This document shows positions 2,323 to 27,619 of a stretch of DNA of 64,000 bases, piece by piece (within the stretch, counting starts at the first letter, position 1; each line of letters opens with the position of its first letter). Source of the stretch: Octopus sinensis (taxonomy: Eukaryota). The translations under genes and the position numbers were made by a program. The stretch lies in assembly GCF_006345805.1 (NCBI RefSeq), contig NC_043022.1, forward strand, positions 17,670,001 to 17,734,000, read 5' to 3'. Below the pieces are notes generated by a model. That model did not search any database and had not been told where the DNA came from. It saw only the letters and a list, made by a program, of their open reading frames with translations.

Positions 2323-2363
<41 letters not shown>

Positions 2364-2382
2364 CAAAGAGAGAGAGAGAGAT

Positions 2383-2697
2383 AAGAGCCACCACATTTCC
2401 TGATAGTGTCAATGCCCGTTGGCACCGGCACCTGAGGCCTCGCCAAAGTTATTCTGATCGCCAGGAGACAAATGTTAAAGTGAATATCCTACACTGCTAA
2501 CAGTATTTGGAATATATGTAAAGGGTGTGTGTGCGTATATATGTGTAGACATACATACACACACACCTTTACATGTATTCTACATACTGTTGCATTGTAA
2601 TACTTGTCTCCTGGTGATCAGAATGACTTTGGCACCGCCCTCAGGTGGTGGTGCCAACGGGCATTGACACTATCATAAATGGAATGTGGGAGTCTTT
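2383..2697. mobile_element. Foldback/MITE-like near-perfect palindrome in UQCR10 intron
   Basis: Left arm ccacatttcctgatagtgtcaatgcccgttggcacc... is the reverse complement of right arm ...ggtgccaacgggcattgacactatcataaatggaatgtgg. Pairing continues to the centre. Confidence 0.75.
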
Positions 2698-5600
2698 TTG
2701 GCCCATTTTGTAACATGGTTCTCTATTTCTTCATTCTTTTCTTCTATAGAATCACCACATCAAGCTGGCTGCAGCTGTAATCACCCTTAATCATGCAGTT
2801 CCCAGTTTTATCAACGGATTTATCATAAATCTCCTTTTCTCTTCAGTTAATGAATCCCCATCCTTCTGTCCTTAACTTCAATGTATTCCTCCTGCCATTC
2901 TGCACTGCTATCCTCATCTTTCATTCCAGTCTGACTGACCAAATTCTTCTTCTCAATATATTCCATGATAACCTCCTTCATTCAGCTGCCACTTCTTTTG
3001 CAAACTGCAGTCTGTTTTTTTATTTTCATGCTTTTATATATACACACACACACACACACACACATATATAAAATCTCTGAATTGATAATGTTCATATGAT
3101 GAACCAGGATGATATTTCTGTGAATTATCTGTGAAACCTACTGGCAAGTGCAGTTTCCTATCCAGGAACTGTCCTAAGTGAGTGATTTTAGGCCATTGTT
3201 CCTAAGTTCTTCTTGGTTAGAACAGTCCTTGGATAGGACTAGCTCTCACTTAGCCTCTGTGGAGATCTAAAACAAAGTTTCCCACTCTCAGGGCCAACTT
3301 TTATAGGATCCAAAATGCATAATGCAGGAACAGGTACCTGCACGTTGAAGTTCATAGTGACATTCAGTGTAGGTATTTACCAGTGTTGGTGTCTTTGCAG
3401 TGAAAGTGATAGATCCAGTAAACCCCCAAGGCACTCACTACTTTCCCCAGCTGCCAGATATGAACTCTGTTGGAAACTGCCTTCAATCTGATTGTCACAT
3501 TGTTTTTCTCTCAGGATGTTATGTAATCAAATAGCCACATGGCAGCAGGCTGGTTGTTAAGTGCCAGAGAATATCCATCATAATGAAGCTGCACATTATC
3601 TCTGGGACCCACTGCTGCTTTGAGTTTCCCTACAACAGCCCCCACTTACTATGTATGTCTGTAGGGAGTCTAGTAAGAGTTTTAATAGGGAAGAGATTCT
3701 GTATTCTCACACTAGACTGGTTCCAAGTTTATCATCCGGGCTTAATTAACAGTGTTGAGCAATAAGCTTTACTAAGGTAGTATTGAACTAGATGTTTCTA
3801 CACTATCATATACTCACACTCATCCCTACATTGCTTTCGATACAAGATATTCTCTTGATCAATTAAAGACCAGAGATAATAACTTCAGTGTGTCTTTATG
3901 ACAAACAGATGTTCAGGCCTATCAGTTGAATGGGTCACTGTTTTGGCCCCTTGGTGTAAGCAACCTTATTTCACTGACATTGCTGATACTTTTTGAAATG
4001 GTATCAACACAACAACTTTCTATTTTTCTAAACTTAATGTTGCAACTTTGATGTCTTTAGAAACACCTTTGCATAAGTTCCATTATAGTTGACATGTAGA
4101 CAGGTGTTGCTTTGTTCCCTTTCACAAGACAATTAGCTCTAATTACCCAGCAAGGTCTTTGTATGTTATCAATATAATTTTCATTATAATGAGGTTTATT
4201 TCTTAATTATTATTTTCATCTGTTGTTTTATGGAATTCTGCTCAGTTTAATTTTGCTTCCAACGAAACCCTTTCTTTAGTCTAAGAAACATTTTAGACTG
4301 TCTCAATAAAAGTATTATTTAGTCTTCATATCATTTTTTACATTGTATTAAGGACTTCCTGGATAATTCTTGTTAAACCCCATAAACATGTTTTCTGAAC
4401 TGCCTCTAACCCCAAATTACGATCAAGTTTTTCAAGGTTTGCTCCCAAATTCTTTGTCACTACTCAAGGTCCCAGTAATAACTGGCAATATCATGACCTT
4501 GTTAACTTTTCTGTTCCAACACTTGGGGACTTCATCCATCAAAACTCTTCTTTTTCCTTTTTCTCTTTCTTATAAATGTCTTTAATGTCCTGTCTGTTCC
4601 ATTTTTCTTTCAGTTTATTTAGGAAAGTCCCTCAACAACCTCACTACAAGGTTGGTAGAATAAAGAACTAGGATCAATTAATCAACCACCCCCTCCTAAA
4701 TGGGTGGCCTTGTGCCTATGTAAGAAATGCTAATCATTGTTCCAGCTTTCTGGGTTCAAATCTCACCAAGGTCAACTTTGCCTTTCATTCTTTCAGGTTT
4801 GATAAAATAAAGTGACAGTCCACAACTGGAAATTTTGAAGATTCAGACTAGACATCTTGTCATATTTCTTCCAGTTCTTTACATTCTGAGTTAACATCAT
4901 TATCTGGTCTTTGGGTACCTTTAAATGACAATCACTCTGTTGCAAGCATTCAGGATGGGCCCTTGGTTTGAGATAACCTCTTCCTACTTCCCATTACCTT
5001 GGAGGCTCTCAACAAATAACTTCTGGCCTTCCCTTGATGAAATGATAAAAATAATATATTTATGTATATTTCTGTTGAAAAATGTCATAACACAGTGGCA
5101 CCTTGCACAAGTGTCTTCTTCTATAGCCTTCGACCGACCAAAGTCTTGTGAGTAGATTTCTTAGATGGAAACTGAAAAGAAGCCCATCTATATATTCATG
5201 TGTCTGCATTTGTCCCCCACCACTGCTTGACAACTGGTGTTGATGTATAAAAAATATGAATACTGAGGTTGATTCATTCAACTAAAAGTTCTTCAAGTTG
5301 GTGCCCCAGCATGGCCACAGTTTAATGACTGAAACCAGTAAAAGACAAAAAACTTTTGGGGTTTCCTTCCTTTAAAAGGTTATGGATTTATTTCTCTCTT
5401 AAATAATTAAAAAGTCTTTCACTTAACAGTTAGAAGCCACACACTGTTCATGCATTTCATGTGTTGGTTGTTCCAAGTGTTGCAGAGGAGAAACACTTCT
5501 CTCTCTTCCTTGTTTGACTTTCTTTTTGTTTATGAAGATTTTTACCAATCTAAAGACATTTGTTCCTAAAGGAAATATCATTATTAGGAAAATACTTTGA

Positions 5601-6182
5601 GACCATATCTCAATTGTCTTCAGCTTCATCCACTGAGTTAAAAATTTCATTGATATCTAGCCATAAAGGCACAAAATCTCATTTAGCAATGTGTTGAGGA
5701 TTTCAGAGACATTCTTCAGAAAGAATCCAGGACACACATGTTCCATTGTCAGATGCAAGGAACAGACTTGTGTAGTGTACGGTAACTCAACCAAGAGAAG
5801 AGTCTCTACACACTTTTATTACATCTGTTGTTCAAATAAAATGTCTTTATCCAAAGGAATGTTCTTATAGATGTCAGAGTGAAGTCCATTTTTGAAAGTT
5901 ATATTCAATAATGTTATATTAAACGATACAAAGGGAGAATATATGTTATGATTACACGAAGAGGTCCAGATCTGTCATTTGCTAGAGACATAACATCACA
6001 AATGCACTAATTATATTTATCATTATTAATTTTGATGATTGATAATATACAAGGGTTTGTTCATAATTAGGGAGAGAAAGGGACTTCAGATGTCTGATAG
6101 AAATGGGGGAGAAACACTGACAAAACCGTTTTTTATTAAATCATTTAAGAGTTATTTTAATATCAACTTGGTTATATTTCAG

Positions 6183-6245
6183 AAATTATGGCATCAAATC
6201 AAATATAAATATATGGAAACACAGGAAGATGGTGATGACGAATGA
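6183..6245 (+). CDS. UQCR10: Cytochrome b-c1 complex subunit 9, coding exon 2
   Basis: Acceptor ttatatttcag|AAA TTA TGG gives KLWHQIKYKYMETQEDGDDE*, matching the conserved KLWKHIKHKYE C-terminus. In frame with exon 1; total 67 aa. Confidence 0.94.
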   Translation, partial: KLWHQIKYKYMETQEDGDDE

Positions 6246-10329: not shown

Positions 10330-11143
10330 GCTTTTTCGACGCGCAGAAATGGCAGGAGCTACTCAGAGGCATTCCAAACTCTTCTGAATTCATCACAATG
10401 TCCGAAATCCTTCCATATCTGTCCTCAGCCAGTTGTTTAGATGGGTCTTAGAGTCTTTGGTATTGCCATTATTCTTAAAGGTACAATTATAATTCTTCTT
10501 AAGACATCGAACTCCTTTTTCTGGATTGCTGGAATCTCAGACCCCTGAATGTTTCCATATCAAACACCGAGATCTTGCAGAGATCTTGAACTTCATACAT
10601 GACCATGTAACCATCTCAAGCTCAATGTCTGCTGTGTTCTTTGGATTGGTGGTATCATGATTGTTATGTCATCCACGAAAGACTTGCGGACCGGGTACCC
10701 TGTGATATCAATTTCTGAACCTCTCACTTCCTTTCCTACAAGTCCAAGCCGTATGTTCATGGCTGTCACGAATGGAACCACGAAAATTGTACAATATGCC
10801 ATCATGATCTTTTCTAGTTTCAGCCATTTAATGCTGATATTTCCCGCGGTGAACCTTATTTTCAACGAATCCATGTGCGACAGTACGATTGACTACTGCT
10901 GATAGTATTTTCATGTAGTTCACTGCATTTTGGATTACCTGGTGGGACTGGTTGTTAATGTATGTTCGAGGCATCCACAATAGCCACCCCACCATGACAA
11001 ACACGGCCAACATTTTTGGAAACTCGTGTCGATACAATCGTTAGCGAGTAGATATGTCGTTAATCATTTAGCAAAGATAGATCGACATTTAATAAAAAGA
11101 TCTCACGAAACTGATCAAGTCCTCATGAGCCTTCAGCGAGTGT
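10330..11143 (-). mobile_element. Decayed HERO-like (R2/NeSL group) non-LTR retrotransposon, C-terminal part of RT
   Basis: Minus-strand remnants with stops and frameshifts: TLAEG..LDQFREIFLLNVD, LTTYLLANDCIDTSFQK, YCTIFVVPFVTAMN, KSFVDDITIM, WSCMKFKISARSRCLI. These follow the order of the HERO RT motifs as I recall them. Confidence 0.8.
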
Positions 11144-14100
11144 CCCGAGCTAAGGCTCACGTGCCAAGGCTCCCGTACCAAGGCTCCCGAGCCAAGGCTC
11201 CTGTGCCAAGGCTCCCGTGCCAAGGTTCCCGGGCCAAGGCTACCTTGCCAAGGATCCCGAGCCAAGGCTCCCGTGCCAAGGCTCCCGTGCGAAGGCTCCC
11301 GTGCCAAGGTTGCCGGGCCAAGGCTTCCTTGCCAAGGATCCCGAGCCAAGGCTCCCGTGCCAAGGCTCCCGTGCCAAGAATCCCGTGCCAAGGCTCCCGT
11401 GTCAAGGATCCCGTGCCAAGGCTCCCGAGCCAAGGCTCCCGTGCCGAGGCTCCCGGGCCAAGGCTCCCATGCCAAGGCTCCCGTGCCAAGGCTCCCGTGC
11501 CAAGGCTCCCGTGCCAAGGCTCCCGAGCCAAGGCTCCCGTGCCAAGGCTCCCGTGCCAAGGCTCCCGGGCCAAGGCTTCCGTGCCAAGGCTCCCGTGCCA
11601 AGGCTAAAGTTCCAAGGCTCCCGTGCCAAGGCTCCCGTGCCAAGGCTCACGTGCCAAGGCTTCCAGGCCAAAGCTCCCGTGCCAAGGCTCCCGTGCTAAG
11701 GCTCCCGTGCCAAGGCTCCCGTGTCAAGCCTCCCGATCCAAGGCTCCCGTGCCAAAGCTCCCGTGCCAAGGCTCCCGGGCCAAGGCTCCCGTGCCAAGGC
11801 ACCCGTGCCAAGGCTCCCGTTCCAAGGCTCCCATGCCAAGGCTTCCGGGCCTAGGCTTCGTTGCCAAGGATCCCGAGCCAAGGCTCCCGTGCCAAGGCTC
11901 CTGTTCCAAGGCTCCCGTGCCAAGGCTTCCGGGCCAAGGCTCCCGTGCCAAGGCTCCCGTTCCAAGGCTCCCGTGCCAAGGCTCCCGGGCCAAGGCTCCC
12001 GTGCCAAGGCTCCCGTGCCAAGGCTCCCGTGCAAAGGCTCCCGTGCCAAGGCTTCCGTGCCAAGGCTTCCGGGCCAAGGCTTCCTTGCCAAGAATCCCGA
12101 GCCAAGGCTCCCGTGCCAAGAATCCCGTGCCAAGGCTCCCATGTCAAGGATCCCGTGCCAAAACACCGTGCCAAGGCCCCGAGCCAAGGCTCCTGTGCCA
12201 AGGATGCCGAGCCAAGGCTCCCGTGCCAAGGCTCCCGGGCAAAGGCTCCTGGGCCAAGGCTCCCGTGCCAAGGCTCCCGTGCCAAGGCTCCCGTGCGAAG
12301 GCTCCCGTGCGAAGGCTCCCGTGCCAAGGCTCCCGTACCAAGGTTCCCATGCCAAGGTTCCCGTGCCAAGGCTCCCGTACCAAGGCTCCCGTGCCAAGGC
12401 TCCCGGGTCAAGGCTCCCGTGCGAAGGCTCCCGTGCGAAGGCTCCCGTGCCAAGGTTCCCGTGCCAAGGCTCCCGTGCCAAGGCTCCCGTGCCAAGGCTC
12501 CCGGGCCAAGGCTCCCAGGCCAAGGCTCCCGTGCCAAGGCTCCCGTCTCAAGGATTCCGAGCCAAGGCTCCCGTGCCAAGGATCCGGAGCCAAGGCTACC
12601 GGGCCAAGGCTCCTGTCTCAAGGATTCCCAGCCATAGCTCCCGTGCCAAGGATCCCGAGCCAAGGCTTCAGTGCCAAGGCTCCCGGGCAAAGGCTCCCGG
12701 GCCAAGGCTCCCGTGCCAAGGCTCCCGGGCCAAGGCTCCCGTGCCAAGGTTCCCGTGCCAAGGCTCCCGTGCCAAGGCTCCCATACCAAGGCTCCCATGC
12801 CAAGGTTCCCGTGCCAAGGCTCCCGTCTCAAGGCTCCCGTGCCAAGGCTCCCGTGCTAAGGCTCCCGTGCCAAGGCTCCCGTCTCAAGGATTCCGAGCCA
12901 AGGCTCCCGTGCCAAGGATCCGGAGCCAAGGCTACCGGGCCAAGGCTCCCGGACCAAGGCTCCTGTCTCAAGGATTCCGAGCCATAGCTCCCGTGCCAAG
13001 GATCCCGAGCCAAGGCTTCAGTGCCAAGGCTCCCGGGCAAAGGCTCCCGGGCCAAGGCTCCCGTGCCAAGGCTCCCGGGCAAGGCTACTGTGCCAAGGTC
13101 CCCGTGCCAAGGCTCCCGTGCCAAGGCTCCCGTACCAAGGCTCCCATGCCAAGGTTCCCGTGCCAAGGCTCCCGTCTCAAGGCTCCCGTGCCAAGGCTCC
13201 CGAGCTAAGGCTCCCGTGCCAAGGCTCCCGTACCAAGGCTCCCGTGCCAAGGCTCCCGTGCCAAGGCTCCCGTGCCAAGGCTCCCATGCCAAGGCTCCCG
13301 TGCCAAGGCTTCCGGGCCAAGGCTTCCTTGCCAAGGATCCCGAGCCAAGGCTCCTGTGCCAAGGATCCCGGGCCAAGGCTCCCGGGCCAAGGCTCCTGTG
13401 CCAAGGCTCCCGGGCCAAGGCTCCCGGGGCAGGGCTCCCGGGCCAAGTTCCCGTGCCAAGGCTCCCGTACCAAGGATCCCGGGCCAAGGCTCCCGTGCCA
13501 AGGCTTCCGTTCCAAGGCTCCCATGCCAAGGCTCCCGTACCAAGGCTCCCGTGCCAAGGCTCCGTGCCAAGGCTCCCGAGCCAAGGCTCCCGTGCCAAGG
13601 CTCCCGGGCCAAGGCTCCCGTCTCAAGGATTCCGAGCCAAGGCTCCCGTGCCAAGGATCCGGAGCCAAGGCTCCCGTGCCAAGGCTCCCGGGCAAAGGCT
13701 CCCGGGCCAAGGCTGCCAGGCCAAGGCGCCCGGGCCAAGGCTCCCGTGCCAAGGATCCCGAGCCAAGGCTCCTGTGCCAAGGATCCCGGGCAAGGCTCCC
13801 GTCTCAAGGCTCCCGTGCCAAGGCTCCCGTGCCAAGGCTCCCGTCTCAAGGCTCCCGTGCCAAGGCTCCCGTTCCAAGGCTCCCATGCCAAGGCTCCCGT
13901 GCCAAGGATCCCGTGCCAAGGCTCCCGTTCCAAGGCTCCCGAGCCAAGGCTCCCGTGCCAAGTCTCCGTGCCAAGGCTCCCGAGCCAAGGCTCCCGGGCC
14001 AAGGCTCCCGTCTCAAGGATTCCGAGCCAAGGCTCCCGTGCCAAGGATCCCGAGCCAAGGCTCCCGTGCCAAGGCTCATGGGCCTAGGCTCCAGTGCCAA

Positions 14101-17100
14101 GGCTCCCGTGCCAAGGCTCCCGTACCAAGGCTCCCATGCCAAGGTTCCCGTGCCAAGGCTCCCGTCTCAAGGCTCCCGTGCCAAGGCTCCCGTGCCAAGG
14201 CTCCCGTGCCAAGGCTTCCGGGCCAAGGCTCCCGTGCCAAGGCTCCCGTTCCAAGGCTCCCGTGCCAAGGCTCCCGGGCCAAGGCTCCCGGGCCAAGGCT
14301 CCCGTGCCAAGGCTCCCATGCCAAGGCTCCCGTGCCAAGGCTTCCGGGCCAAGGCTTCCTTGTCAAGGATCCCGGGTCAAGGCTCCCATGCCAAGGCTCC
14401 CGTGCCAAGGCTCCCGTGCCAAGGCTCCCATGCCAAGGCTCCCGTGCCAAGGCTTCCGGGCCAAGGCTTCCTTGCCAAGGCTCCCGTGCCAAGAATCCCG
14501 TGCCAAGGATCCCGAGCCAAGGCTCCCGTGCCAAGGCTCCCGAGCAAAGGCTCCCGGGCCAAGGCTCTCGTGCCAAGGTTCCTGTGCCATGGCTCCCGTG
14601 CCATGGCTCCCGTGCCAAGGCTCCCGGGCCAAGGCTAACGGGCCAAGGCTCCCGTGCCAAGGCTCCCGTGCCAAGGCTCCCATATCAAGGAGTCCGAGCC
14701 AAGGCTCCCGTGCCAAGGATCCGGAGCAGAGGCTCCCGTGCCAAGGCTCTCGGGCCAAGGCTCCCGGGCCAAGGCTCCCGGGCCAAGGCTAACGGGCCAA
14801 GGCTCCCGTGCCAAGGCTCCCGGGCCAAGGCTCCCGTCTCAAGGATTCCGAGCCAAGGCTCCCGTGCCAAGGCTCCCGGGCCAAAGTTCCCGTGCCAAGG
14901 CTCCCGGGCAAAGGCTCCCGTGCCAAGGCTCCTGGGCCAAGGCTCCCGTGCCAAGGTTCCCGTGCCAAGGCTCCCGTGCCAAGGCTCCCGTGCCAAGGCT
15001 CCCGTGCCAAGGATCCCGAGCCAAGGCTCCTGTGCCAAGGATCCCTGGCGATGGCTCCCGGGCCAAGGATCCCGTGCCAAGGCTCCCGTTCCAAGGCTCC
15101 CGGGCCAAGGCTCCCGGGCCAAGGCTCCCGTGCCAAGGATCCCGAGCCAAGGCTCCAGTGCCAAGGATCCCGGGCCAAGGCTCCCGGGCCAAGGCTCCCG
15201 TGCCAAGGCTCCCGTGCCAAGGCTCCCGGGCCAAGGCTCCCGGGCCAAGGCTCCCGTGCCAAGGCTCCCGTGCCAAGGCTCCCGTTCCAAGGCTCCCATG
15301 CCAAGGCTCCTGTGCCAAGGCTCCCAGGCCAAGGCTCCCGTGCCAAGACTCCCGTGCCAAGGCTCCCAGGCCAAGGCTCCCGTGCCAGGGCTCCCGGGCC
15401 AAGTTCCTGTGCCAAGGCTCCCGTACGAAGGCTCCCGGGCCATGGCTCCCGTGCCAAGTCTCCCGGGCCAAGGCTCCCGTGCCAAGACTCCCGTGCCAAG
15501 GCTCCCAGGCCAAGGCTCCCGTGCCAAGGCTCCCGTGCCAAGGATCCTGTGCCAAGGCTCCCGTTCCAAGGCTCCCGAGCCAAGGCTCCCGTGCCAAGGC
15601 TCCGTGCCAAGGCTCCCGAGCCAAGGCTCCCGTGCCAAGGCTCCCGTTCTAAGGCTCCCGTGCCAAGGCTCCCGTGCCAAGGCTCCCGGGCCAAGGTGCT
15701 GTGCCAAGGCTCCTGGGCCAAGGCTCCCGTGCCAAGGCTCCCGTGCCAAGGCTCCCATGCCAAGGCTCCCGGGCCAAGGCTCCCGTGCCAAGACTCCCGT
15801 GCCAAGGCTCCCAGGCCAAGGCTCCCCTGCCAAGGCTCCCGTGCCAAGGCTCCCATGCCAAGGCTCCCGGGCCAAGGCTCCCGTGCCAAGACTCCCGTGC
15901 CAAGGCTCCCAGGCCAAGGCTCCCATTCCAAGGCTCCCGAGCCAAGGCTCCCGTGCCAAGGCTCCTGTGCCAAGGTTCCCATGCCAAGGCTCCCATGCCA
16001 AGGTTTCCGGGCCAAGTCTCCCGTGCCAAGGCTCACGGGCCAAGGCTCCCGTGCCAAGGCTCCCGTGCCAAGGCTCCCGTGCCATTGCTCCCGGACCAAG
16101 GCTCCCGGGCCAAGGCTCCCGTGCCAAGGATCCCGAGCCAAGGCTCCTGTGCCAAGGATCCCTGGCCATGGCTCCCGGGCCAAGGCTCCCGTGCCAAGGC
16201 TCCCGTGCCAAGGCTCCCGGTCCAAGGCTCCCGTGCCAAGGCTCCTGTGCCAAGGCTCCCGTGCCAGGGCTCCCGGCCAAGTTCCCGTGCCAAGGCTCCC
16301 GTATCAAGGCTCCCGTGCCAAGGCTCCCGTGCTAAGGCTCCCGTGCCAAGGCTTCCGTACCAAGGCTCCCGTGCCAAGGCTCCCGGGTCAAGGCTCCCGT
16401 GCCAAGGCTCCCGAGCCAAGGCTCCCAGGCCAAGGCTCCCGTGCCAAGGTTCCCGTGCCATGGCTCCCGTGCCAAGACTCCCGTGCCAAGGCTCCCGGGC
16501 CAAGGCTCCCGGGCCAAGGCTCCCGTGCCAAGGCTCCCGTATCAAGGATTCCGAGCCAAGGCTCCCGTGCCAAGGATCCGGCGCAGAGGCTCCCGTGCCA
16601 AGGCTCCCGGGCCAAGGCTCCCGGGCCAAGGCTCCTGGGCCAAGGCTCCCGGGCCAAGGCACCCGGGCCAAGTCTCCCGTGCCAGGGATCCCGAGCAAAG
16701 GCTCCTGTGCCAAGGATCCCGGGCCAAGGCTCCTGTGCCAAGGCTCCCGGGCCAAGGCTCCCGTGCCAAGGCTCCCGTGCCAAGGTTCCCGGGCCAAGGC
16801 TCCCGGGCTAAGGCTCCCGTGCCAAGGCTCCTGTGCCAAGGCTCCCGTGCCAAGGCTCCCGGGCCAAGTTCCCGTTCCAAGGCTCCCGTACCAAGGCTCC
16901 CGAGCGAAGGCTCCCGTGCCAAGGCTCCTGTTCCAAGGCTCCCATGCCAAGGCTCCCGTGCCAAGGCTCCCGGGCCAAGGCTCCCGTGCCAAGGCTCCCG
17001 GGCCAAGGCTCTGTGCCAAGGCTCCCGTGCCAAGGCTCCCGGGCAAAGGCTCCCGGGCCAAGGCTCCCGTCTCAAGGATTCCAAGCCAAGGCTCCCGTGC

Positions 17101-20100
17101 CAAGGCTCCCGGGCCAAAGCTCCCGTGCCAAGGCTCCCGGGCAAAGGCTCCCGGGCCAAGGCTCCCGTGCCAAGGCTCCTGGGCCAAGGCTCCCGTGCCA
17201 AGGTTCCTGTGCCAAGGCTCCCGTGCCAAGGCTCCCGTGCCAAGGCTCCCGTGCCAAGGCTCCAGTACCAAGGCTCCCGTGCCAAGGCTCCCATGCCAAG
17301 GCTCCCGTGCCAAGGATCCCGTGCCAAGGCTCCCGTTCCAAGGCTCCCGGGCCAAGGCTCCCGGGCCAAGGCTCCCGTGCCAAGTATCCCGAGCCAAGGC
17401 TCCTGTGCCAAGGATCCCATGCCAAGGCTCCTGTGCCAAGGCTCCCAGGCCAAGGCTCCCGTGCCAAGACTCCCGTGCCAAGGCTCCCAGGCCAAGGCTC
17501 CCGTGCCAGGGCTCCCGGGCCAAGTTCCCGTGCCAAGGCTCCCGTACGAAGGCTCCCGGGCCATGGCTCCCGTGCCAAGTCTCCCGGGCCAAGGCTCCCG
17601 TGCCAAGACTCCCATGCCAAGGCTCCCAGGCCAAGGCTCCTGTGCCAAGGCTCCCGTGCCAAGGATCCTGTGCCAAGGCTCCCGTTACAAGGCTCCCGAG
17701 CCAAGGCTCCTGTGCCAAGGCTCCGTGCCAAGGCTCCCGAGCCAAGGCTCCCGTGCCAAGGCTCCCGTTCTAAGGCTCCCGTGCCAAGGCTCCCGTGCCA
17801 AGGCTCCCGTGCCAAGGCTCCCATGCCAAGGCTCCCGGGCCAAGGCTCCCGTGCCAAGACTCCCGTGCCAAGGCTCCCAGGCCAAGGCTCCCGTTCCAAG
17901 GCTCCCGAGCCAAGGCTCCCGTGCCAAGGCTCCCGTGCCAAGGCTCCCATGCCAAGGCTCCCATGCCAAGGCTTCCGGGCCAAGTCTCCCGTGCCAAGGC
18001 TCACGGGCCAAGGCTCCCGTGCCAAGGCTCCCGTGCCATTGCTCCCGGGCCAAGGCTCCCGGGCCAAGGCTCCCGTGCCAAGGATCCCGAGCCAAGGCTC
18101 CTGTGCCAAGGATCCCTGGCCATGGCTCCCGGGCCAAGGCTCCTGTGCCAAGGCTCCCGTGCCAAGGCTCCCGGGCCAAGGCTCCCGTGCCAAGGCTCCT
18201 GTGCCAAGGCTCCCGTGCCAGGGCTCCCGGGCCAAGTTCCCGTGCCAAGGCTCCCGTATCAAGGCTCCCGGGCCAAGGCTCCCGTGCCAAGGCTCCCGTT
18301 CCAAGGCTCCCATGCCAAGGCTCCCGTGCCAAGGCTCCCGGGCCAAGGCTCCCGTGCCAAGGCTCACGGGCCAAGGCTCCCGTGCCAAGGCTCCCGTGCC
18401 AAGGCTCCCATGCCAAGGCTCCCGGGCCAAGGCTCCCGTGCCAAGACTCACGTGCCAAGGCTCCCAGGCCAAGGCTCCCGTGCCAAGGCTCCCGTGCCAA
18501 GTTCCCGTGCCAAGGCTCCCGTATCAAGGCTCCCGGGCCAAGGCTCCCGTGCCAAGGCTCCCGTGCCAAGGATCCGGAGCAGAGGCTCCCGTGCCAAGGC
18601 TCCCGGGCCAAGGCTCCCGGGCCAAGGCTCCCGGGCCAAGGCACCCGGGCCAAGGCTCCCGTGCCAGGGATCCCGAGCAAAGGCTCCTGTGCCAAGGATC
18701 CCGGGCCAAGGCTCCTGTGCCAAGGCTCCCGGGCCAAGGCTCCCGTGGCAAGGCTCCCGTGCCAAGGTTCCCGGGCCAAGGCTCCCGGGCTAAGGCTCCC
18801 GTGCCAAGGCTCCTGTGCCAAGGCTCCTGTGCCAAGGCTCCCGGGCCAAGTTCCCGTTCCAAGGCTCCCGTACCAAGGCTCCCGGGCGAAGGCTCCCGTG
18901 CCAAGGCTCCTGTTCCAAGGCTCCCATGCCAAGGCTCCCGTGCCAAGGCTCCCGGGCCAAGGCTCCCGTGCCAAGGCTCCCGGGCCAAGGCTCCGTGCCA
19001 AGGCTCCCGTGCCAAGTCTCCCGGGCCAAGGCTCCCGTGCCAAGACTCCCATGCCAAGGCTCCCAGGCCAAGGCTCCCGTGCCAAGGCTCCCGTGCCAAG
19101 GATCCTGTGCCAAGGCTCCCGTTACAAGGCTCCCGAGCCAAGGCTCCTGTGCCAAGGCTCCGTGCCAAGGCTCCCGAGCCAAGGCTCCCGTGCCAAGGCT
19201 CCCGTTCCAAGGCTCCCGTGCCAAGGCTCCCGTGCCAAGGCTCCCGTGCCAAGGCTCCCATGCCAAGGCTCCCGGGCCAAGGCTCCCGTGCCAAGACTCC
19301 CGTGCCAAGGCTCCCAGGCCAAGGCTCCCGTTCCAAGGCTCCCGAGCCAAGGCTCCCGTGCCAAGGCTCCCGTGCCAAGGCTCCCATGCCAAGGCTCCCA
19401 TGCCAAGGCTTCCGGCCAAGTCTCCCGTGCCAAGGCTCACGGGCCAAGGCTCCCGTGCCAAGGCTCCCGTGCCATTGCTCCCGGGCCAAGGCTCCCGGGC
19501 CAAGGCTCCCGTGCCAAGGATCCCGAGCCAAGGCTCCTGTGCCAAGGATCCCTGGCCATGGCTCCCGGGCCAAGGCTCCTGTGCCAAGGCTCCCGTGCCA
19601 AGGCTCCCGGGCCAAGGCTCCCGTGCCAAGGCTCCTGTGCCAAGGCTCCCGTGCCAGGGCTCCCGGGCCAAGTTCCCGTGCCAAGGCTCCCGTATCAAGG
19701 CTCCCGGGCCAAGGCTCCCGTGCCAAGGCTCCCGTTCCAAGGCTCCCATGCCAAGGCTTCCGTGCCAAGGCTCCCGGGCCAAGGCTCCCGTGCCAAGGCT
19801 CACGGGCCAAGGCTCCCGTGCCAAGGCTCCCGTGCCAAGGCTCCCATGCCAAGGCTCCCGGGCCAAGGCTCCCGTGCCAAGACTCCCGTGCCAAGGCTCC
19901 CAGGCCAAGGCTCCCGTGCCAAGGCTCCCGTGCCAAGTTCCCGTGCCAAGGCTCCCGTATCAAGGCTCCCGGGCCAAGGCTCCCGTGCCAAGGCTCCCGT
20001 GCCAAGGATCCGGAGCAGAGGCTCCCGTGCCAAGGCTCCCGGGCCAAGGCTCCCGGGCCAAGGCTCCCGGGCCAAGGCTCCCGGGCCAAGGCACCCGGGC

Positions 20101-23100
20101 CAAGGCTCCCGTGCCAGGGATCCCGAGCAAAGGCTCCTGTGCCAAGGATCCCGGGCCAAGGCTCCTGTGCCAAGGCTCCCGGGCCAAGGCTCCCGTGCCA
20201 AGGCTCCCGTGCCAAGGTTCCCGGGCCAAGGCTCCCGGGCTAAGGCTCCCGTGCCAAGGCTCCTGTGCCAAGGCTCCTGTGCCAAGGCTCCCGGGCCAAG
20301 TTCCCGTTCCAAGGCTCCCGTACCAAGGCTCCCGGGCGAAGGCTCCCGTGCCAAGGCTCCTGTTCCAAGGCTCCCATGCCAAGGCTCCCGTGCCAAGGCT
20401 CCCGGGCCAAGGCTCCCGTGCCAAGGCTCCCGGGCCAAGGCTCCGTGCCAAGGCTCCCGAGCCAAGGCTCCCGTGCCAAGGCTCCCGGGCAAGGCTCCCG
20501 GGCCAAGGCTCCCGTCTCAAGGATTCCGATCCAAGGCTCCCGTGCCAAGGCTCCCGGGCCAAAGCTCCCGTGCCAAGGCTCCCGGGCCAAGGCTCCCGGG
20601 CCAAGGCTCCCGTGCCAAGGCTCCTGGGCCAAGGCTCCCGTGCCAAGGTTCCCGTGCCAAGGCTCCCGTGCCAAGGCTCCCGTGCCAAGGCTCCCGTGCC
20701 AAGGCTCCAGTACCAAGGCTCCCGTGCCAAGGCTCCCATGCCAAGGCTCCCGTGCCAAGGATCCCGTGCCAAGGCTCCCGTTCCAAGGCTCCCGGGCCAA
20801 GGCTCCCGGGCCAAGGCTCCCGTGCCAAGGATCCCGAGCCAAGGCTCCAGTGCCAAGGATCCCGGGCCAAGGCTCCCGGGCCAAGGCTCCCGTGCCAAGG
20901 CTCCCGTGCCAAGGCTCCCGGGCCAAGGCTCCCGGGCCAAGGCTCCCGTGCCAAGGCTCCCGTGCCAAGGCTCCCGTTCCAAGGCTCCCATGCCAAGGCT
21001 CCTGTGCCAAGCCTCCCAGGCCAAGGCTCCCGTGCCAAGACTCCCGTGCCAAGGCTCCCAGGCCAAGGCTCCCGTGCCAGGGCTCCCGGGCCAAGTTCCC
21101 GTGCCAAGGCTCCCGTACGAAGGCTCCCGGGCCATGGCTCCCGTGCCAAGTCTCCCGGGCCAAGGCTCCCGTGCCAAGACTCCCGTGCCAAGGCTCCCAG
21201 GCCAGGCTCCCGTGCCAAGGCTCCCGTGCCAAGGATCCTGTGCCAAGGCTCCCGTTCCAAGGCTCCCGAGCCAAGGCTCCCGTGCCAAGGCTCCGTGCCA
21301 AGGCTCCCGTGCCAAGCTCCCGTTCTAAGGCTCCCGTGCTAAGGCTCCCGTGCCAAGGCTCCCGGGCCAAGGTGCCGTGCCAAGGCTCCCGTGCCATTGC
21401 TCCCGGGCCAAGGCTCCCGGGCCAAGGCTCCCGTGCCAAGGATCCCGAGCCAAGGCTCCTGTGCCAGGCTCCCGTGCCAAGGCCCCGGGCCAAGGCTCCT
21501 GTGCCAAGGCTCCCGTGCCAAGGCTCCCGGGCCAAGGCTCCCGTTCCAAGGCTCCTGTGCCAAGGCTCCCGTGCCAGGCTCCCGGGCCAAGTTCCGTGCC
21601 AAGGCTCCCGTATCAAGGCTCCCGGGCAAGGCTCCGTGCCAAGGCTCCCGTTCCAAGGCTCCCATGCCAAGGCTTCCGTGCCAAGGCTCCCGGGCCAAGG
21701 CTCCCGTGCCAAGGCTCACGGGCCAAGGCTCCCGTGCCAAGGCTCCCGTGCCAAGGCTCCCGTGCCAAGGCTCCGGGCCAAGGCTCCCGTGCCAAGACTC
21801 CCGTGCCAAGGCTCCCAGGCCAAGGCTCCCGTGCCAAGGCTCCCGTGCCAAGTCCCGTGCCAAGGCTCCCGTATCAAGGCTCCCGGGCCAAGGCTCCCGT
21901 GCCAAGGCTCCCGTGCCAAGGCTCCGGGCCAAGGCTCCGTGCCAAGGCTCCCGGGCCAAGGCTCCCGGCCAAGGCTCCCGGGCCAAGGCTCCCGGGCCAA
22001 GGCACCCGGGCCAAGGCTCCCGTGCCAGGGATCCCGAGCCAAGGCTCCTGTGCCAAGGATCCCGGGCCAAGGCTCTGTGCCAAGGCTCCCGGGCCAAGGC
22101 TCCCGTGCCAAGGCTCCCGTGCCAAGGTTCCCGGGCCAGGCTCCCGGGCTAAGGCTCCCGGCCAAGGCTCCTGCCAAGGCTCCCGTGCCAAGGATCCCGA
22201 GCAAGGCTCCCTTGCCAAGGCTCCCTGGCCAAGGCTCCCGGCCAAGGCTCCCGGGCCAAGGCTCCCGGGCCAAGGCTCCCGTGCCAAGGCTCCCGAGCGA
22301 AGGCTCCCGTGCCAAGGTTCCCGTGCCAAGCTCCCGTGCCAAGGCTCCCTGCCAAGGCTCCCGGGTCAAGGCTCCCGTGCCAAGGTTCCCGGGCCAAGGC
22401 TCCCTGGCCAAGGCTCCCGGCCAAGCTCCCGTGCCAAGGATCCTGAGCCAAGGCTCCCGGCCAAGGCTCCCGTTCCAAGGCTCCCGTACAAGGCTCCCGT
22501 GCCAAGGCTCCCGTGCCAAGGCTCCTGTTCCAAGGCTCCCGGCCAAGGCTCCCGTGCCAAGGCTCCCGGCCAAGGTTCCCGTGCCAAGCTCCCGGGCCAA
22601 GGCTCCCGGCCAGGCTCCCGTGCCAAGTCTCCCGGCCAAGGCTCCCGGCCAAGGCTCCCGTGCCAAGACTCCCATGCCAAGGCTCCCGGGCCAAGGCTCC
22701 CGTGCCAAGGCTCCCGTGCCAAGGATCCTGTGCCAAGGCTCCCGTTACAAGGCTCCCGAGCCAAGGCTCCTGTGCCAAGGCTCCGTGCCAAGGCTCCCTC
22801 CCGAGCCAAGGCTCCCGTGCCAAGGCTCCCGTTCTAAGGCTCCCGTGCCAAGGCTCCCGTGCCAAGGCTCCCGTGCCAAGGCTCCCATGCCAAGGCTCCC
22901 GGGCCAAGGCTCCCGTGCCAAGACTCCCGTGCCAAGGCTCCCAGGCCAAGGCTCCCGTTCCAAGGCTCCCGAGCCAAGGCTCCCGTGCCAAGGCTCCCGT
23001 GCCAAGGCTCCCATGCCAAGGCTCCCATGCCAAGGCTTCCGGGCCAAGTCTCCCGTGCCAAGGCTCACGGGCCAAGGCTCCCGTGCCAAGGCTCCCGTGC

Positions 23101-26100
23101 CATTGCTCCCGGGCCAAGGCTCCCGGGCCAAGGCTCCCGTGCCAAGGATCCCGAGCCAAGGCTCCTGTGCCAAGGATCCCTGGCCATGGCTCCCGGGCCA
23201 AGGCTCCTGTGCCAAGGCTCCCGTGCCAAGGCTCCCGGGCCAAGGCTCCCGTGCCAAGGCTCCTGTGCCAAGGCTCCGTGCCAGGCTCCCGTGCCAAGTT
23301 CCCGTGCCAAGGCTCCCGTATCAAGGCTCCCGGCCAAGGCTCCCGTGCCAAGGCTCCCGTTCCAAGGCTCCCGTGCCAAGACTCCCATGCCAAGGCTTCC
23401 GTGCCAAGGCTCCCGGGCCAAGGCTCCCGTGCCAAGGCTCACGGGCCAAGGCTCCGTGCCAAGGCTCCCGTGCCAAGGCTCCTGCCAAGGCTCCCGGGCC
23501 AAGGCTCCCGTGCCAAGACTCCCGTGCCAAGGCTCCCAGGCCAAGGCTCCCGTGCCAAGGCTCCCGTGCCAAGTTCCCGTGCCAAGGCTCCCGTATCAAG
23601 GCTCCCGGGCCAAGGCTCCCGTGCAAGGCTCCCGTGCCAAGGCTCCGGCCAAGGCTCCCGTCCAAGGCTCCCGTGCCAAGGCTCCCGTGCCAAGGCTCCC
23701 GGGCCAAGGCTCCCGTGCCAAGGCCCCGGGCCAAGGCTCCCGTGCCAGGGATCCCGAGCAAAGGCTCCTGTGCCAAGGATCCCGGGCCAAGGCTCCTGTG
23801 CCAAGGCTCCCGGGCCAAGGCTCCCGTGCCAAGGCTCCCGTGCCAAGGTTCCCGGGCCAGGCTCCCGTGCCAAGGCTCCCGTGCCAAGGCTCCTGTGCCA
23901 AGGCTCCTGTTCCAAGGCTCCCGGGCCAAGTTCCCGTGCCAAGGCTCCCGTACCAAGGCTCCCGGGCGAAGGCTCCCGTGCCAAGGCTCCTGTTCCAAGG
24001 CTCCCATGCCAAGGCTCCCGTGCCAAGGCTCCGGGCCAAGGCTCCCGTGCCAAGGCTCCCGGGCCAAGGCTCCGTGCCAAGCTCCCGTGCCAAGGCTCCC
24101 GGCCAAGGCTCCCGGGCAAAGGCTCCCGGGCCAAGGCTCCCGTCTCAAGGATTCCGATCCAAGGCTCCCGTGCCAAGGCTCCCGGGCCAAAGCTCCCGTG
24201 CCAAGGCTCCCGGGCCAAGGCTCCCGGGCCAAGGCTCCGTGCCAAGGCTCCTGGGCCAAGGCTCCCGTGCCAAGGTTCCCGTGCCAAGGCTCCCGTGCCA
24301 AGGCTCCCGTGCCAAGGCTCCCGTCCAAGGCTCCCGTACCAAGGCTCCCGTGCCAAGGCTCCCATGCCAGGCTCCCGTGCCAAGGATCCCGGCCAAGGCT
24401 CCCGTGCCAAGGCTCCCGGGCCAAGGCTCCCGGGCCAAGGCTCCCGTGCCAAGGATCCCGAGCCAAGGCTCCCGTGCCAAGGCTCCGGGCCAAGGCTCCC
24501 GGGCAAGGCTCCCGTGCCAGGCTCCCGTGCCAAGGCTCCCGGCCAAGGCTCCCGGGCCAAGGCTCCCGTGCCAAGGCCCGTGCCAAGGCTCCCGTTCCAA
24601 GGCTCCCATGCCAAGGCTCCTGTGCCAAGGCTCCCAGGCCAAGGCTCCCGTGCCAAGACTCCCGTGCCAAGGCTCCCAGGCCAAGGCTCCCGTGCCAGGC
24701 TCCCGGGCCAAGTTCCGTGCCAAGGCTCCCGTACGAAGGCTCCCGGGCCATGGCTCCCGTGCCAAGTCTCCCGGGCCAAGGCTCCCGTGCCAAGGCTCCC
24801 GTGCCAAGGCTCCCTGCCAAGGCTCCCAGCCAAGGCTCCCGTGCCAAGGCTCCCGTGCCAAGGATCCTGTGCCAAGGCTCCCGTTCCAAGGCTCCGAGCC
24901 AAGGCTCCCGTGCCAAGGCTCCGTGCCAAGGCTCCCGTGCCAAGGCTCCCGTTCCAAGGCTCCCGTGCTAAGGCTCCCGTGCCAAGGCTCCCGGGCCAAG
25001 GTCCCGTGCCAAGGCTCCTGGGCCAAGGCTCCCGTGCCAAGGCTCCGTGCCAAGGCTCCCAGGCCAAGGCTCCCGTGCCAAGGCTCCCGTGCCAAGGATC
25101 CTGTGCCAAGGCTCCCGTTCCAAGGCTCCCGAGCCAAGGCTCCCGTGCCAAGGCTCCGTGCCAAGGCTCCCGTGCCAAGGCTCCCGTTCTAAGGCTCCCG
25201 TGCTAAGGCTCCCGTGCCAAGGCTCCCGGGCCAAGGTGCCGTGCCAAGGCTCCTGGGCCAAGGCTCCCGTGCCAAGGCTCCCGTGCCAAGGCTCCCATGC
25301 CAAGGCTCCCGTGCCAAGGATCCCGGGCCAAGGCTCCCGTGCCAAGGCTCCCGTGCCAAGGCTCCCGGGCCAAGGCTCCCGTGCCAAGGCTCCCGTGCCA
25401 AGGCTCCTGTGCCAAGGCTCCCAGGCCAAGGCTCCCGTGCCAAGACTCCCGAGCCAAGGCTCCCGTGCCAAGCTCCCGTTCTAAGGCTCCCGTGCCAAGG
25501 CTCCCGTGCCAAGGCTCCCGTGCCAAGGCTCCCGTGCCAGGCTCCCGGGCCAAGTTCCCGTGCCAAGGCTCCCGTATCAAGGCTCCCGGGCCAAGGCTCC
25601 CGTGCCAAGGCTCCCGTTCCAAGGCTCCCATGCCAAGGCTCCCGTGCCAAGGCTCCCGGGCCAAGGCTCCCGTGCCAAGGCTCACGGGCCAAGGCTCCGG
25701 TGCCAAGGCTCCCGTGCCAAGGCTCCCATGCCAAGGCTCCCGGGCCAAGGCTCCCGTGCCAAGACTCCCGTGCCAAGGCTCCCAGGCCAGGCTCCCGTGC
25801 CAAGGCCCGTGCCAAGGCTCCCGTACCAAGGATCCGTGCCAAGGCTCCCGTATCAAGGCTCCGGGCCAAGGCTCCTGTGCCAAGGCTCCCGTTCCAAGGC
25901 TCCCATGCCAAGGCTCCCGTGCCAAGGCTCCCGGGCCAAGGCTCCCGTGCCAAGGCTCACGGGCCAAGGCTCCCGTGCCAAGGCTCCCGTGCCAAGGCTC
26001 CCATGCCAAGGCTCCCGGGCCAAGGCTCCCGTGCCAAGACTCCCGTGCCAAGGCTCCCGTGCCAAGGTTCCCGTGCCAAGGCTCCCGTGCCAAGGCTCCT

Positions 26101-26256
26101 GTGCCAAGGCTTCCGGGCCAAGGCTCCCGTGCCAAGGCTTCCGGGCCAAGGCTCCCGTGCCAAGGCTCCCGTGCCAAGGCTCCCGTGCCAAGGCTCCCGG
26201 GCCAAGGCTCCCTGGCCAAGGCTCCCGTACCAAGGATCCCGTGCCAAGGCTCCCGT
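11144..26256. repeat. GC-rich 14-bp satellite/minisatellite array, consensus CCAAGGCTCCCGTG, ~15.1 kb, ~1080 monomers
   Basis: Direct reading of uninterrupted head-to-tail monomers with recurrent variants (cccggg, cccgag, cccatg, cctgtg, ggatcc). Sharp junctions at 11144 and 26256. Confidence 0.98.
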
Positions 26257-26830
26257 TTCTTCTTCCAGATAGAATGTAAAAATCTTGCTAGACTCTAGAC
26301 GGTTCGGGCAGATTTTGTAAACTCCATATGTGGTACCAGATGGCCCTGGGGCAGATTCTGGTTGAGCTTTTATCACCACTATCTTGATTTCGTTGATAGT
26401 GAATTTTGACATGTTGAAAGGCGTTTGAGGTCTGAGCGTTGGCTGGGAAAGAACAATTTCTCAATGGAATATTTCTTCAGGGGTCACCGTGCTTTCTGCT
26501 GCACTGTTCGCTACCGCTTCCATGGAACATAGCCACTTGCTTTTTGGTTTTCTGAGATGGTCAGCTGTGGACTAGAAGAAATTGTTTTAAAAGGCTTTCA
26601 AGGCATTCGCCCAGCCTCTCTCTTTTTCTGGAATTATTCTTACACATGAAGCTGGAGCAGGTTTCTTCATAATTCAGAGCTAAGCTCATTACCTGCTTCT
26701 TTTGAACTTTGCTTCATCTGTCTTAACTCTTTTCTCAATTCTACAATCTGACATTGCCCCACCTACCCCGGGACCAATAACCATCGTCGATCTGGTCAGA
26801 TACAATTCTACAATTTAATTATAAGTAACA
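26257..26830 (-). mobile_element. Decayed HERO-like retrotransposon, pre-RT region and RT N-terminus (same element as 10330-11143)
   Basis: Minus strand IVELRKELRQMKQ, HGDP*R, PQTPFNMSKFTINEIKIVVIKAQPESAPGPSGTTYGVYKICP, then IWKKK at the satellite junction. Matches KARxxSAPGPSGxxYxVYKxCP. Confidence 0.82.
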
Positions 26831-27492: not shown

Positions 27493-27619
27493 ATGGGGAA
27501 ACGATATTACTGTGACTTTTGCGATAAATCTTTCGCAGATCTACCGAACAACAGGAAAAAACATATAAATGGAAGTCTTCACCAAAGGATGAGAAAGCAA
27601 CATTATGATGCGTTCAGAG
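27493..27619 (+). CDS. ZMAT5: Zinc finger matrin-type protein 5 (U11/U12 snRNP 20K), coding exon 1
   Basis: MGKRYYCDFCDKSFADLPNNRKKHINGSLHQRMRKQHYDAFR is a U1-like matrin C2H2 finger closely matching the ZMAT5 N-terminus. Phase-1 donor AG|gtttcg at 27620. Confidence 0.95.

What the first reader, a model, noticed from the sequence alone, without database searches (positions are those of the whole stretch)
11129..26270. A 15-kb satellite apparently born from 14 bp of a retrotransposon reverse-transcriptase ORF
Seen in the sequence: the two unique flanks of the array are consecutive parts of one minus-strand HERO-like RT. The right junction (minus strand) reads ATC TGG AAG AAG AAA | CGG GAG CCT TGG CAC GGG (IWKKK-REPWHG). 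The left junction reads ...GGG | ACA CTC GCT GAA GGC (TLAEG, then LDQFREIFLLNVD). Collapsing the array to one monomer plus the shared CGGG (18 nt) gives IWKKKREPWHGTLAEG. This has the same 11-residue IW-to-AEG spacing as the HERO RT motif as I recall it (IWRRGKxPxxWRxAEG). The Pro falls in register, and the conserved Trp position is GGG, one substitution from TGG. Inference: the monomer is not a foreign insertion. It is a tandem duplication of RT coding sequence at a 4-bp CGGG microhomology, later amplified about 1000-fold in place. Birth site, seed sequence and likely mechanism are all visible at one locus.
Basis: partly seen in the sequence, partly recalled or inferred. Interest (0 to 1): 0.88.

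Follow-up and report, generated by a model that had tools for sequence, protein, structure and literature searches.

The report
Tandem array grown from retrotransposon codons
A 15-kb run of about 1,090 copies of a 14-base unit, lying between two octopus genes, grew out of six codons of a dead retrotransposon's reverse-transcriptase gene; it is a clean example of a known way that repeats arise from transposons.

Summary
Window 11144-26255 is one uninterrupted array of about 1087 units of CGGGAGCCTTGGCA (minus strand).

The flanks are consecutive parts of one decayed reverse transcriptase (RT). The closest relative, P0001, aligns up to residue 243 on the right flank and from residue 242 on the left. 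Across 103 relatives the W-x5-P-x2-W-x2-AEG segment is a gap-free 16 residues in 101. The window restores that length only if the array is collapsed to one unit plus its terminal CGGG.

In that register the 18 nt match the closest relatives at 12-13 of 18 positions. That is the best of all 28 unit registers, though the runner-up scores 11. These relatives carry CTGG...CTGG where the window has CGGG...CGGG.

Origin from RT coding sequence by a microhomology-flanked 14-bp duplication is therefore well supported. Later growth included block duplications of 0.5-1.5 kb that are 96-98% identical. Full-length relatives are non-LTR elements with a restriction-like endonuclease (RLE); the specific HERO assignment is untested.

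Two points could not be tested: amplification in place, and absence of the 14-mer elsewhere in the genome. Tandem repeats derived from transposon coding regions are already documented, so this is a new member of a known kind.

The parts
11144..26255 (-). Tandem array of about 1087 units of 14 bp. The minus-strand consensus is CGGGAGCCTTGGCA and the plus-strand form is TGCCAAGGCTCCCG. GC content is 69%.
26242..26255 (-). First unit, contiguous with the upstream RT codons. It reads CGG GAG CCT TGG CA and is identical to the array consensus. Its first nine bases continue the RT frame as R-E-P, compared with L-E-P in the closest relatives.
11144..11147 (-). Terminal partial unit CGGG. It gives the 4-nt overlap (microhomology) between unit start and array end, and it occupies the codon that is TGG (conserved Trp) in relatives.
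   Evidence: Relatives L001 and L006 have CTGG at both corresponding positions.
26256..26634 (-). Upstream part of the decayed RT fragment, ending in ARFLHSIWKKK. It contains at least one frameshift.
   Evidence: tblastn: P0001 residues 112-243 align to 26634-26247, 50% identity over 112 aa. Other relatives agree. Frames were read.
10476..11143 (-). Downstream part of the same RT fragment. It starts TLAEGS*GLDQFREIFLLNVD and runs through the RT motifs (IDTSFQK, GCLEHT, RFTAGN, FVDDITI). It has several stops and frameshifts, and the C-terminal endonuclease region is absent.
   Evidence: tblastn: P0001 residues 242-417 align to 11158-10740. Longer relatives reach about 10476. Frames were read.
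17545..20497 (.). Two tandem copies of a block of about 1.44-1.5 kb inside the array, 98.2% identical. Random array segments are 86% identical.
14888..15708 (.). Array blocks duplicated elsewhere in the array. 14888-15531 matches 20580-21223 at 97.5%. 15158-15708 matches 17279-17829 at 96.0%. 17030-17525 matches 20475-20970 at 96.2%.
27493..27618 (+). Context: ZMAT5 coding exon 1, 1.24 kb from the right edge of the array. Further exons lie near 28882-28953, 31807-31881 and 33030-33062.
   Evidence: Identical to Octopus bimaculoides A0A0L8I8X0 over its first ~65 residues, up to where that entry's sequence departs from the window's exons.
1582..6212 (+). Context: UQCR10 coding exons at 1582-1710 and 6183-6212. 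The array lies in the UQCR10-ZMAT5 intergenic interval.

Best explanation
A fragment of a non-LTR retrotransposon of the restriction-like-endonuclease (RLE) type lies on the minus strand between UQCR10 and ZMAT5. Inside its RT gene, in the short conserved segment W-x5-P-x2-W-x2-AEG, a 14-bp stretch (CNGG AGCCTTGGCN) was followed by a repeat of its own first four bases (CNGG). Replication slippage or microhomology-mediated repair between these two 4-mers duplicated the 14 bp in tandem. Once two or more copies existed, further slippage and unequal exchange enlarged the array to about 1087 units (15.1 kb). Point mutations, CpG transitions, 1-bp indels and duplications of 0.5-1.5 kb blocks then diversified it.

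Shown: the array interrupts one RT between consecutive codons. One unit plus CGGG restores the family's invariant spacing and frame. That 18-mer is homologous to the relatives' codons. Block duplications exist.

Inferred: the slippage or microhomology mechanism of the first duplication, the order of events, and that all amplification happened at this locus. The array most likely has no function of its own.
For: Flanks are consecutive in P0001 (residues up to 243 on the right, from 242 on the left) and in nine other relatives.

The family has 17,763 representatives at E<=1e-3. In an alignment of 103 of them, the 16-residue W...AEG segment is gap-free in 101, and the second Trp is conserved in at least 90%.

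The window collapsed to one unit plus 4 nt gives IWKKKREPWHGTLAEG, also 16 residues. Pro falls at position 8, and E-P and TLAEG are identical to P0001 and P0006.

DNA comparison: window CGG GAG CCT TGG CAC GGG against L001 CTG GAA CCC GGG CTC TGG gives 12/18. Against L006 CTG GAA CCT GGG CTC TGG it gives 13/18. The register fixed by the junctions is the best of 14 rotations on 2 strands. The binomial P for at least 12/18 at p=0.25 is 2.3e-4.

L001 and L006 have CTGG at positions 1-4 and 15-18, the same places as the window's CGGG...CGGG.

The first unit equals the array consensus. The 3'-most junction reads CTC GGG ACA, compared with CTC TGG ACT in relatives.

Block duplications are 96-98% identical against an 86% background. 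No copy of the 14-mer lies elsewhere in the 64-kb window.
Against: No copy of this RT family from the same genome could be examined. The relatives used are distant, about 42-50% amino-acid identity.

Both the unit and the relatives' codons are G/C-rich, so a wrong register still reaches 11/18. The nucleotide match alone is therefore only moderately strong.

The more distant relatives L003 and L005 match at only 5-6 of 18 and lack the 4-mer repeat.

The one-copy progenitor allele was not observed. Genome-wide absence of the 14-mer was not tested. Array edges are not more diverged than the interior, so there is no positional gradient to indicate age.
Confidence: 0.8

Rival explanations
1. The tandem duplication, or a short array, was already present inside the progenitor retrotransposon or in another genomic copy. 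It reached this locus by retrotransposition, segmental duplication or gene conversion. On this view the repeat was born from the RT, but not at this site, and sister arrays exist elsewhere.
For: Expansion of short arrays carried inside transposons is a documented route to satellites. Nothing in the tools allowed a genome-wide count. A weak second RT-like fragment exists in the window at 42197-42358, so the family has other copies nearby.
Against: None of the relatives whose DNA could be read (L001/L002, L003, L005, L006) has any duplication at this site. A 14-bp duplication shifts the RT frame, so a carrier would not be autonomous. No 14-mer occurs elsewhere in the window.
Confidence: 0.1
2. 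A foreign minisatellite or satellite was inserted into the RT or replaced part of it, with loss of exactly the 18 nt of RT sequence. The resemblance of the unit to RT codons is then chance.
For: The wrong-register control reaches 11/18, so G/C-rich 18-mers can resemble each other by chance. An unrelated metagenome scaffold, L004, carries a 14-mer that is 11-13/14 identical to this one with unrelated flanks. This shows that similar units can arise independently.
Against: This model needs three coincidences together: a deletion of exactly six codons, an array ending on a partial unit of exactly 4 nt, and the junction register being the best match of 28. There is no target-site duplication. The first nine array bases continue the RT frame as R-E-P, against L-E-P in the closest relatives.
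Confidence: 0.04
3. The array is real, but its length and internal block duplications are partly artefacts of long-read assembly. The 13-nt and 15-nt units and the 1.4-kb duplicated blocks could come from homopolymer errors or mis-collapsed or mis-expanded repeats.
For: About 16% of units are not 14 nt long (126 of 13 nt, 42 of 15 nt, 15 of other lengths). Several variants are shortened G, C or T runs, which is typical of long-read error. No reads were available.
Against: Many variant units recur within the 96-98% identical blocks, as expected of real inherited variants. Both junctions are clean and consistent with each other.
Confidence: 0.06

Closest known systems
Minisatellites and satellites derived from internal segments of transposable elements. 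Examples listed in Zattera & Bruschi 2022 (PMC9659126) are PROsat and Pvc20 from LINE-1 ORF2, chicken HinfI from the CR1 3'UTR plus partial ORF2, and about 7,276 transposon-derived human minisatellites. Reviewed in PMC12628747.
   Same: A tandem array arose by tandem repetition of a sub-segment of a retrotransposon, here inside the RT coding region. Microhomology-mediated duplication followed by unequal exchange is the mechanism the reviews propose.
   Different: The unit is very short (14 bp, under five codons) and the array is long (15 kb). The donor is an RLE-type non-LTR element in a cephalopod. Both junctions still sit inside the donor copy, so the seed can be read directly. Whether the repeat is present at other loci, as a true satellite would be, is unknown.
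Minisatellite birth by replication slippage between short direct repeats that flank the future unit (the model of Haber & Louis 1998, cited from my own knowledge and not checked here).
   Same: The unit is bounded by a 4-nt direct repeat: CGGG...CGGG in the window and CTGG...CTGG at the same positions in the closest relatives. The array ends on that partial unit.
   Different: The progenitor allele is inferred from distant relatives and was not observed. Four nucleotides is at the short end of the microhomologies invoked in that model.
RLE-bearing non-LTR retrotransposons: the clades R2, R4, CRE, NeSL and HERO (Kojima & Jurka 2015, PMC4640811).
   Same: Full-length relatives of the flanking RT have an RT domain, a C-terminal CCHC zinc finger and an RPD...E...K nuclease motif. 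They have no Pfam hit to an AP-like (apurinic/apyrimidinic) endonuclease. One has an N-terminal Ulp1 protease, as in NeSL. The best solved-structure matches are R2 proteins.
   Different: The window copy is only an RT fragment, corresponding roughly to residues 80-630 of proteins of about 1,100 aa, and has no endonuclease part. Assignment to HERO rather than NeSL was not tested against reference sequences.

Membership tests
Transposon-derived tandem repeat (in-situ tandem repetition of an internal transposon segment) | Both flanks of the array are contiguous sequence of one transposon copy. | tested here: met
   P0001 residues up to 243 align to the right flank and residues from 242 to the left flank. 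Nine further relatives agree.
Transposon-derived tandem repeat (in-situ tandem repetition of an internal transposon segment) | The unit is homologous to the transposon sequence expected at the interrupted position. | tested here: met
   One unit plus 4 nt restores the 16-residue spacing that is gap-free in 101 of 103 relatives. Identity to L001 and L006 is 12-13 of 18 nt, the best of 28 registers with a runner-up of 11.
Transposon-derived tandem repeat (in-situ tandem repetition of an internal transposon segment) | There is no insertion signature (target-site duplication or foreign termini) at the array ends. | tested here: met
   Junctions were read directly. The only repeated bases are the unit's own CGGG.
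Satellite DNA in the strict sense | Abundant in the genome, in long arrays, usually at several loci or in heterochromatin. | not testable with these tools
   No octopus genome or reads were available. Searches through the protein database and metagenomes found no other array, but those collections hold none of this array's reading frames, not even the window's own.
Minisatellite | Unit of about 10-100 bp in an array of 0.5 kb to tens of kb at a single locus. | tested here: met
   14-bp unit, 15.1 kb, one locus in the window.
Minisatellite | Length hypervariability between individuals. | not testable with these tools
   Only one haplotype is available.
Origin by microhomology or slippage duplication | A short direct repeat bounds the future unit in the progenitor sequence. 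| tested here: inconclusive
   The array ends on a 4-nt partial unit (CGGG). The closest relatives have CTGG at both corresponding positions, while the more distant L003 and L005 do not. The progenitor allele itself was not seen.
RLE-type non-LTR retrotransposon (R2/R4/CRE/NeSL/HERO) | RT domain of non-LTR type. | tested here: met
   Homology to RVT_1-bearing proteins, E=4e-38. Family relatives hit RVT_1, and the best solved-structure matches are R2 proteins at E=1e-21. Pfam did not score the decayed window copy directly.
RLE-type non-LTR retrotransposon (R2/R4/CRE/NeSL/HERO) | C-terminal CCHC zinc finger plus PD-(D/E)xK nuclease, and no N-terminal AP-like endonuclease. | tested here: inconclusive
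   These features are present in full-length relatives (CCHC followed by RPD..ELT..K; no Exo_endo_phos hit). They are absent from the window copy, which ends at about 10476 before that region.
HERO clade specifically | Placement with HERO reference elements in an RT phylogeny. | not tested
   No HERO or NeSL reference sequences were at hand. One relative has an Ulp1 protease domain, a feature described for NeSL and Utopia.

The most novel reading that the evidence does not exclude
The array is unique to this locus and to this octopus lineage, with a one-copy state in sister species. That would make it a datable, fully traceable case of repeat birth. In addition, the resulting 15-kb block affects regulation or chromatin of the UQCR10-ZMAT5 interval. 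The block is 69% GC, has one CpG per unit, and carries about 1,000 GCCAA motifs (GCCAA recalled from memory as an NFI half-site, not tested). It sits 1.24 kb upstream of the ZMAT5 start codon.
Probability: 0.05. Interest if true: 0.6.

Novelty: new member of a known kind. Interest (0 to 1): 0.33.

Why it matters
Most transposon-derived satellites are recognised only by residual similarity between a consensus unit and a transposon. The locus where the first duplication happened is usually lost. Here the donor copy, the exact six codons used, the 4-nt overlap and the later block duplications are all readable at one locus. This makes it a useful teaching case for the microhomology-then-unequal-exchange model of repeat birth. 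It would also be a good target for comparative dating across Octopus species. It does not change the current understanding of how such repeats arise.

Tried and rejected
- Pfam on the frame-corrected window RT and on each flank separately found nothing. The copy is too decayed, so homology had to come from database relatives.
- I searched the protein database with the peptides that the array encodes on both strands. The aim was to find the same 14-mer elsewhere. It returned only two unrelated repeats. The better hit, P0004/L004, is a 280-bp array of a similar 14-mer with unrelated flanks.
- An exact 28-mer scan of metagenome contigs found nothing.
- The route to orthologous loci through ZMAT5 failed. 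Only a UniRef entry without contigs exists for Octopus.
- The junction-spanning reading frame 25957-26412 is not in the contig collection.
- No higher-order repeat shows at lags of 1-60 units. Periodicity appears only as kb-scale blocks.
- Neither strand shows a hairpin signal (z = +0.87 and -0.53), and no G-quadruplex appears in the minimum-energy fold. DNA structure therefore does not explain the expansion.
- There is no divergence gradient towards the array edges.
- The window has no Rfam family and no tRNA.
Full report
**1. The observation.** Tandem Repeats Finder reports a single array at 11143-26256: period 14, 1087.4 copies, 85% matches. Read base by base, the array occupies 11144-26255 (15,112 nt). 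The minus-strand unit is CGGGAGCCTTGGCA.

A dynamic-programming segmentation gives 1087 units: 904 of 14 nt, 126 of 13 nt and 42 of 15 nt. Of these, 292 are identical to the consensus. There are 1184 edits over 15,108 nt, or 7.8%. Matches to the unit with up to 2 mismatches number 981, against 0.62 expected from shuffles. None lies outside the array in any rotation or on either strand.

The array is 69% GC in a window that is otherwise 38% GC.

**2. The flanks are one reverse transcriptase (RT).** Both flanks are full of stops and frameshifts, and Pfam does not score them. A frame-corrected translation nevertheless finds P0001 (431 aa, RVT_1 domain, E=4e-38), P0002 and P0003.

tblastn of P0001 against the window maps its residues as follows:
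- residues 112-223 to 26634-26305 (50% identity)
- residues 229-243 to 26291-26247
- residues 242-275 to 11158-11081
- residues 281-417 to 11081-10740

The right flank therefore stops and the left flank starts at the same residue of the relative. Nine longer relatives give the same picture. They show that RT homology covers only 26634-26256 and 11143 to about 10476. The copy is a fragment truncated at both ends.

**3. The test of in-situ origin.** An exhaustive search with P0001 finds 17,763 representative proteins at E<=1e-3. In an alignment of 103 of them, the segment W-x5-P-x2-W-x2-AEG is 16 residues without a gap in 101, and the second Trp is conserved in at least 90%.

If the whole array is removed, the window has only IWKKK|TLAEG, which is six codons short. 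If the array is collapsed to one unit plus its terminal CGGG (18 nt), the window reads IWKKKREPWHGTLAEG. This is 16 residues with Pro at position 8. The closest relatives, P0001 and P0006, read LWKKKLEPGLWTLAEG.

At the DNA level the 18 nt compare as follows:

| Source | Sequence | Identity to window |
|---|---|---|
| Window | CGG GAG CCT TGG CAC GGG | - |
| L001 (locus encoding P0001) | CTG GAA CCC GGG CTC TGG | 12/18 |
| L006 (metagenome copy found with a degenerate junction pattern) | CTG GAA CCT GGG CTC TGG | 13/18 |

As a control, I compared all 14 rotations of the unit on both strands with these relatives. The register fixed by the junctions is the best of 28. The runner-up reaches 11/18, because both sequences are G/C-rich.

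The nucleotide match alone is therefore only moderately strong. The binomial P for at least 12/18 at p=0.25 is 2.3e-4, and about 6e-3 at p=0.35. The case rests on three things coinciding: exact spacing, exact frame and best register. The more distant relatives L003 and L005 keep the spacing and the TGG codon but match at only 5-6 of 18.

**4. Microhomology.** The array ends on a 4-nt partial unit (CGGG), so the inferred progenitor had CGGG at positions 1-4 and 15-18 of the 18-mer. L001 and L006 have CTGG at exactly these two positions. This supports a short direct repeat 14 nt apart in the ancestral sequence of this subfamily. It is the classic substrate for slippage or microhomology-mediated tandem duplication.

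The first unit, contiguous with the upstream codons, equals the array consensus. The last full unit ends in GCT, so the junction reads CTC GGG ACA, compared with CTC TGG ACT in relatives. This is only a weak hint, because the T variant occurs in about 8% of units. There is no target-site duplication.

**5. How the array grew.** Unit-level autocorrelation shows no short higher-order repeat at lags of 1-60 units, and divergence shows no gradient towards the edges. Long k-mers recur at offsets of about 1436-1450, 2121, 3445, 3628 and 5692 nt. The identities of the duplicated blocks are:

| Block | Copy | Identity |
|---|---|---|
| 17545-19057 | 18985-20497 | 98.2% |
| 14888-15531 | 20580-21223 | 97.5% |
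| 15158-15708 | 17279-17829 | 96.0% |
| 17030-17525 | 20475-20970 | 96.2% |
| random array segments (control) | - | 86% |

Later growth therefore involved duplication of kb-scale blocks. That fits unequal exchange rather than only unit-by-unit slippage.

Common variants include the CpG transitions TGGG... and CAGG..., together with a major A/C polymorphism at unit position 14. Neither strand folds better than shuffled controls, and no G-quadruplex is predicted. DNA structure gives no explanation for the expansion.

**6. What the retrotransposon is.** Full-length relatives carry an RVT_1 domain and a zinc-binding zf-RVT domain. Downstream they have a CCHC motif followed by RPD(L/I/V)...ELT...K, the PD-(D/E)xK restriction-like endonuclease (RLE) signature. 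They have no AP-like endonuclease (apurinic/apyrimidinic type, Pfam Exo_endo_phos). One relative has an N-terminal Ulp1/C48 protease. The best solved-structure matches are R2 proteins at E=1e-21, ahead of LINE-1 ORF2p at 2e-11.

This is the architecture of the RLE-bearing non-LTR clades R2, R4, CRE, NeSL and HERO (PMC4640811). 'HERO-like' is plausible, but I did not test it against reference elements. The window copy itself has no endonuclease part.

**7. Context.** UQCR10 exons lie at 1582-1710 and 6183-6212. ZMAT5 exon 1 lies at 27493-27618, and all are on the plus strand. The ZMAT5 exons are identical to the Octopus bimaculoides UniRef entry A0A0L8I8X0 over its first ~65 residues, up to where that entry's sequence departs from the window's exons. 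The right edge of the array is 1.24 kb upstream of the ZMAT5 start codon.

**8. What could not be tested.** I could not reach an octopus genome, other same-genome copies of the RT family, or the orthologous interval in sister species. The following attempts failed:
- The protein database holds no reading frames from this array.
- The Octopus ZMAT5 entry has no contig.
- A 28-mer scan of metagenome contigs found nothing.

As a result, 'amplified in place' and 'the 14-mer occurs nowhere else' remain inferences. A 280-bp array of a similar 14-mer in an unrelated metagenome scaffold, L004, has unrelated flanks and is probably convergent.

**9. Comparison with what is known.** Two reviews state that satellites and minisatellites arise from sub-segments of transposons, including coding regions. 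Their examples are LINE-1 ORF2 giving PROsat and Pvc20, chicken CR1 partial ORF2 giving HinfI, and about 7,276 transposon-derived human minisatellites. They propose microhomology-mediated duplication followed by non-allelic recombination as the mechanism (PMC12628747; PMC9659126).

This locus is a new member of that kind. It stands out for its very short unit, its long array, its RLE-type donor in a cephalopod, and the preservation of both junctions inside the donor copy.

**10. Verdict.** My confidence is about 0.8 for origin from the RT codons. It is lower for the exact first-step mechanism and for amplification strictly in place. Interest is modest at 0.33: the example is clean and traceable, but it does not add a new principle.

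Noticed in passing
L004 2440-2717: An ENA metagenome scaffold carries 20 copies of the 14-mer TG(C/T)CAAGGCTAC(C/T)G. This is 11-13/14 identical to the window's plus-strand unit TGCCAAGGCTCCCG. It sits next to a 25-mer repeat, and its flanks are unrelated to the window. The similarity is probably convergent.
   Followed up: partly
window 26256-27493: The array ends only 1.24 kb upstream of the ZMAT5 start codon. It forms a 15-kb block that is 69% GC with one CpG per unit (911 CpG, observed/expected 0.51), in a region that is 38% GC with CpG observed/expected 0.37. A regulatory or chromatin effect is conceivable but untested.
   Followed up: no
window 11081-11134: The window RT copy lacks about 8 codons between AEG and FREI relative to the family (AEGS*GLDQFREI against AEGCFVPKELNSTRLEQFREI). 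This is a second length change, close to the array.
   Followed up: no
window 42197-42358 (-): A weak second RT-like match (P0001 residues 312-365, E=0.004) may be another decayed fragment of a related element.
   Followed up: no
window 40270-40424 and 48410-48624: Two short tandem arrays with 78-bp and 66-bp units both contain TAAAAAGCACC. They may come from one dispersed repeat family.
   Followed up: no
P0030 (relative, 1316 aa): One full-length relative combines an N-terminal Ulp1/C48 protease with the RT, a CCHC finger and an RPD...E...K nuclease motif. This architecture is described for NeSL and Utopia elements. The family may therefore sit nearer NeSL than HERO.
   Followed up: partly
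L001 and L002 (assembly GCA_977066275.1): The closest relative, P0001, is encoded identically at two loci of one animal genome assembly. In both it lies next to LTR-retroelement genes, which suggests a recent duplication or recent activity there. The organism was not identified.
   Followed up: no
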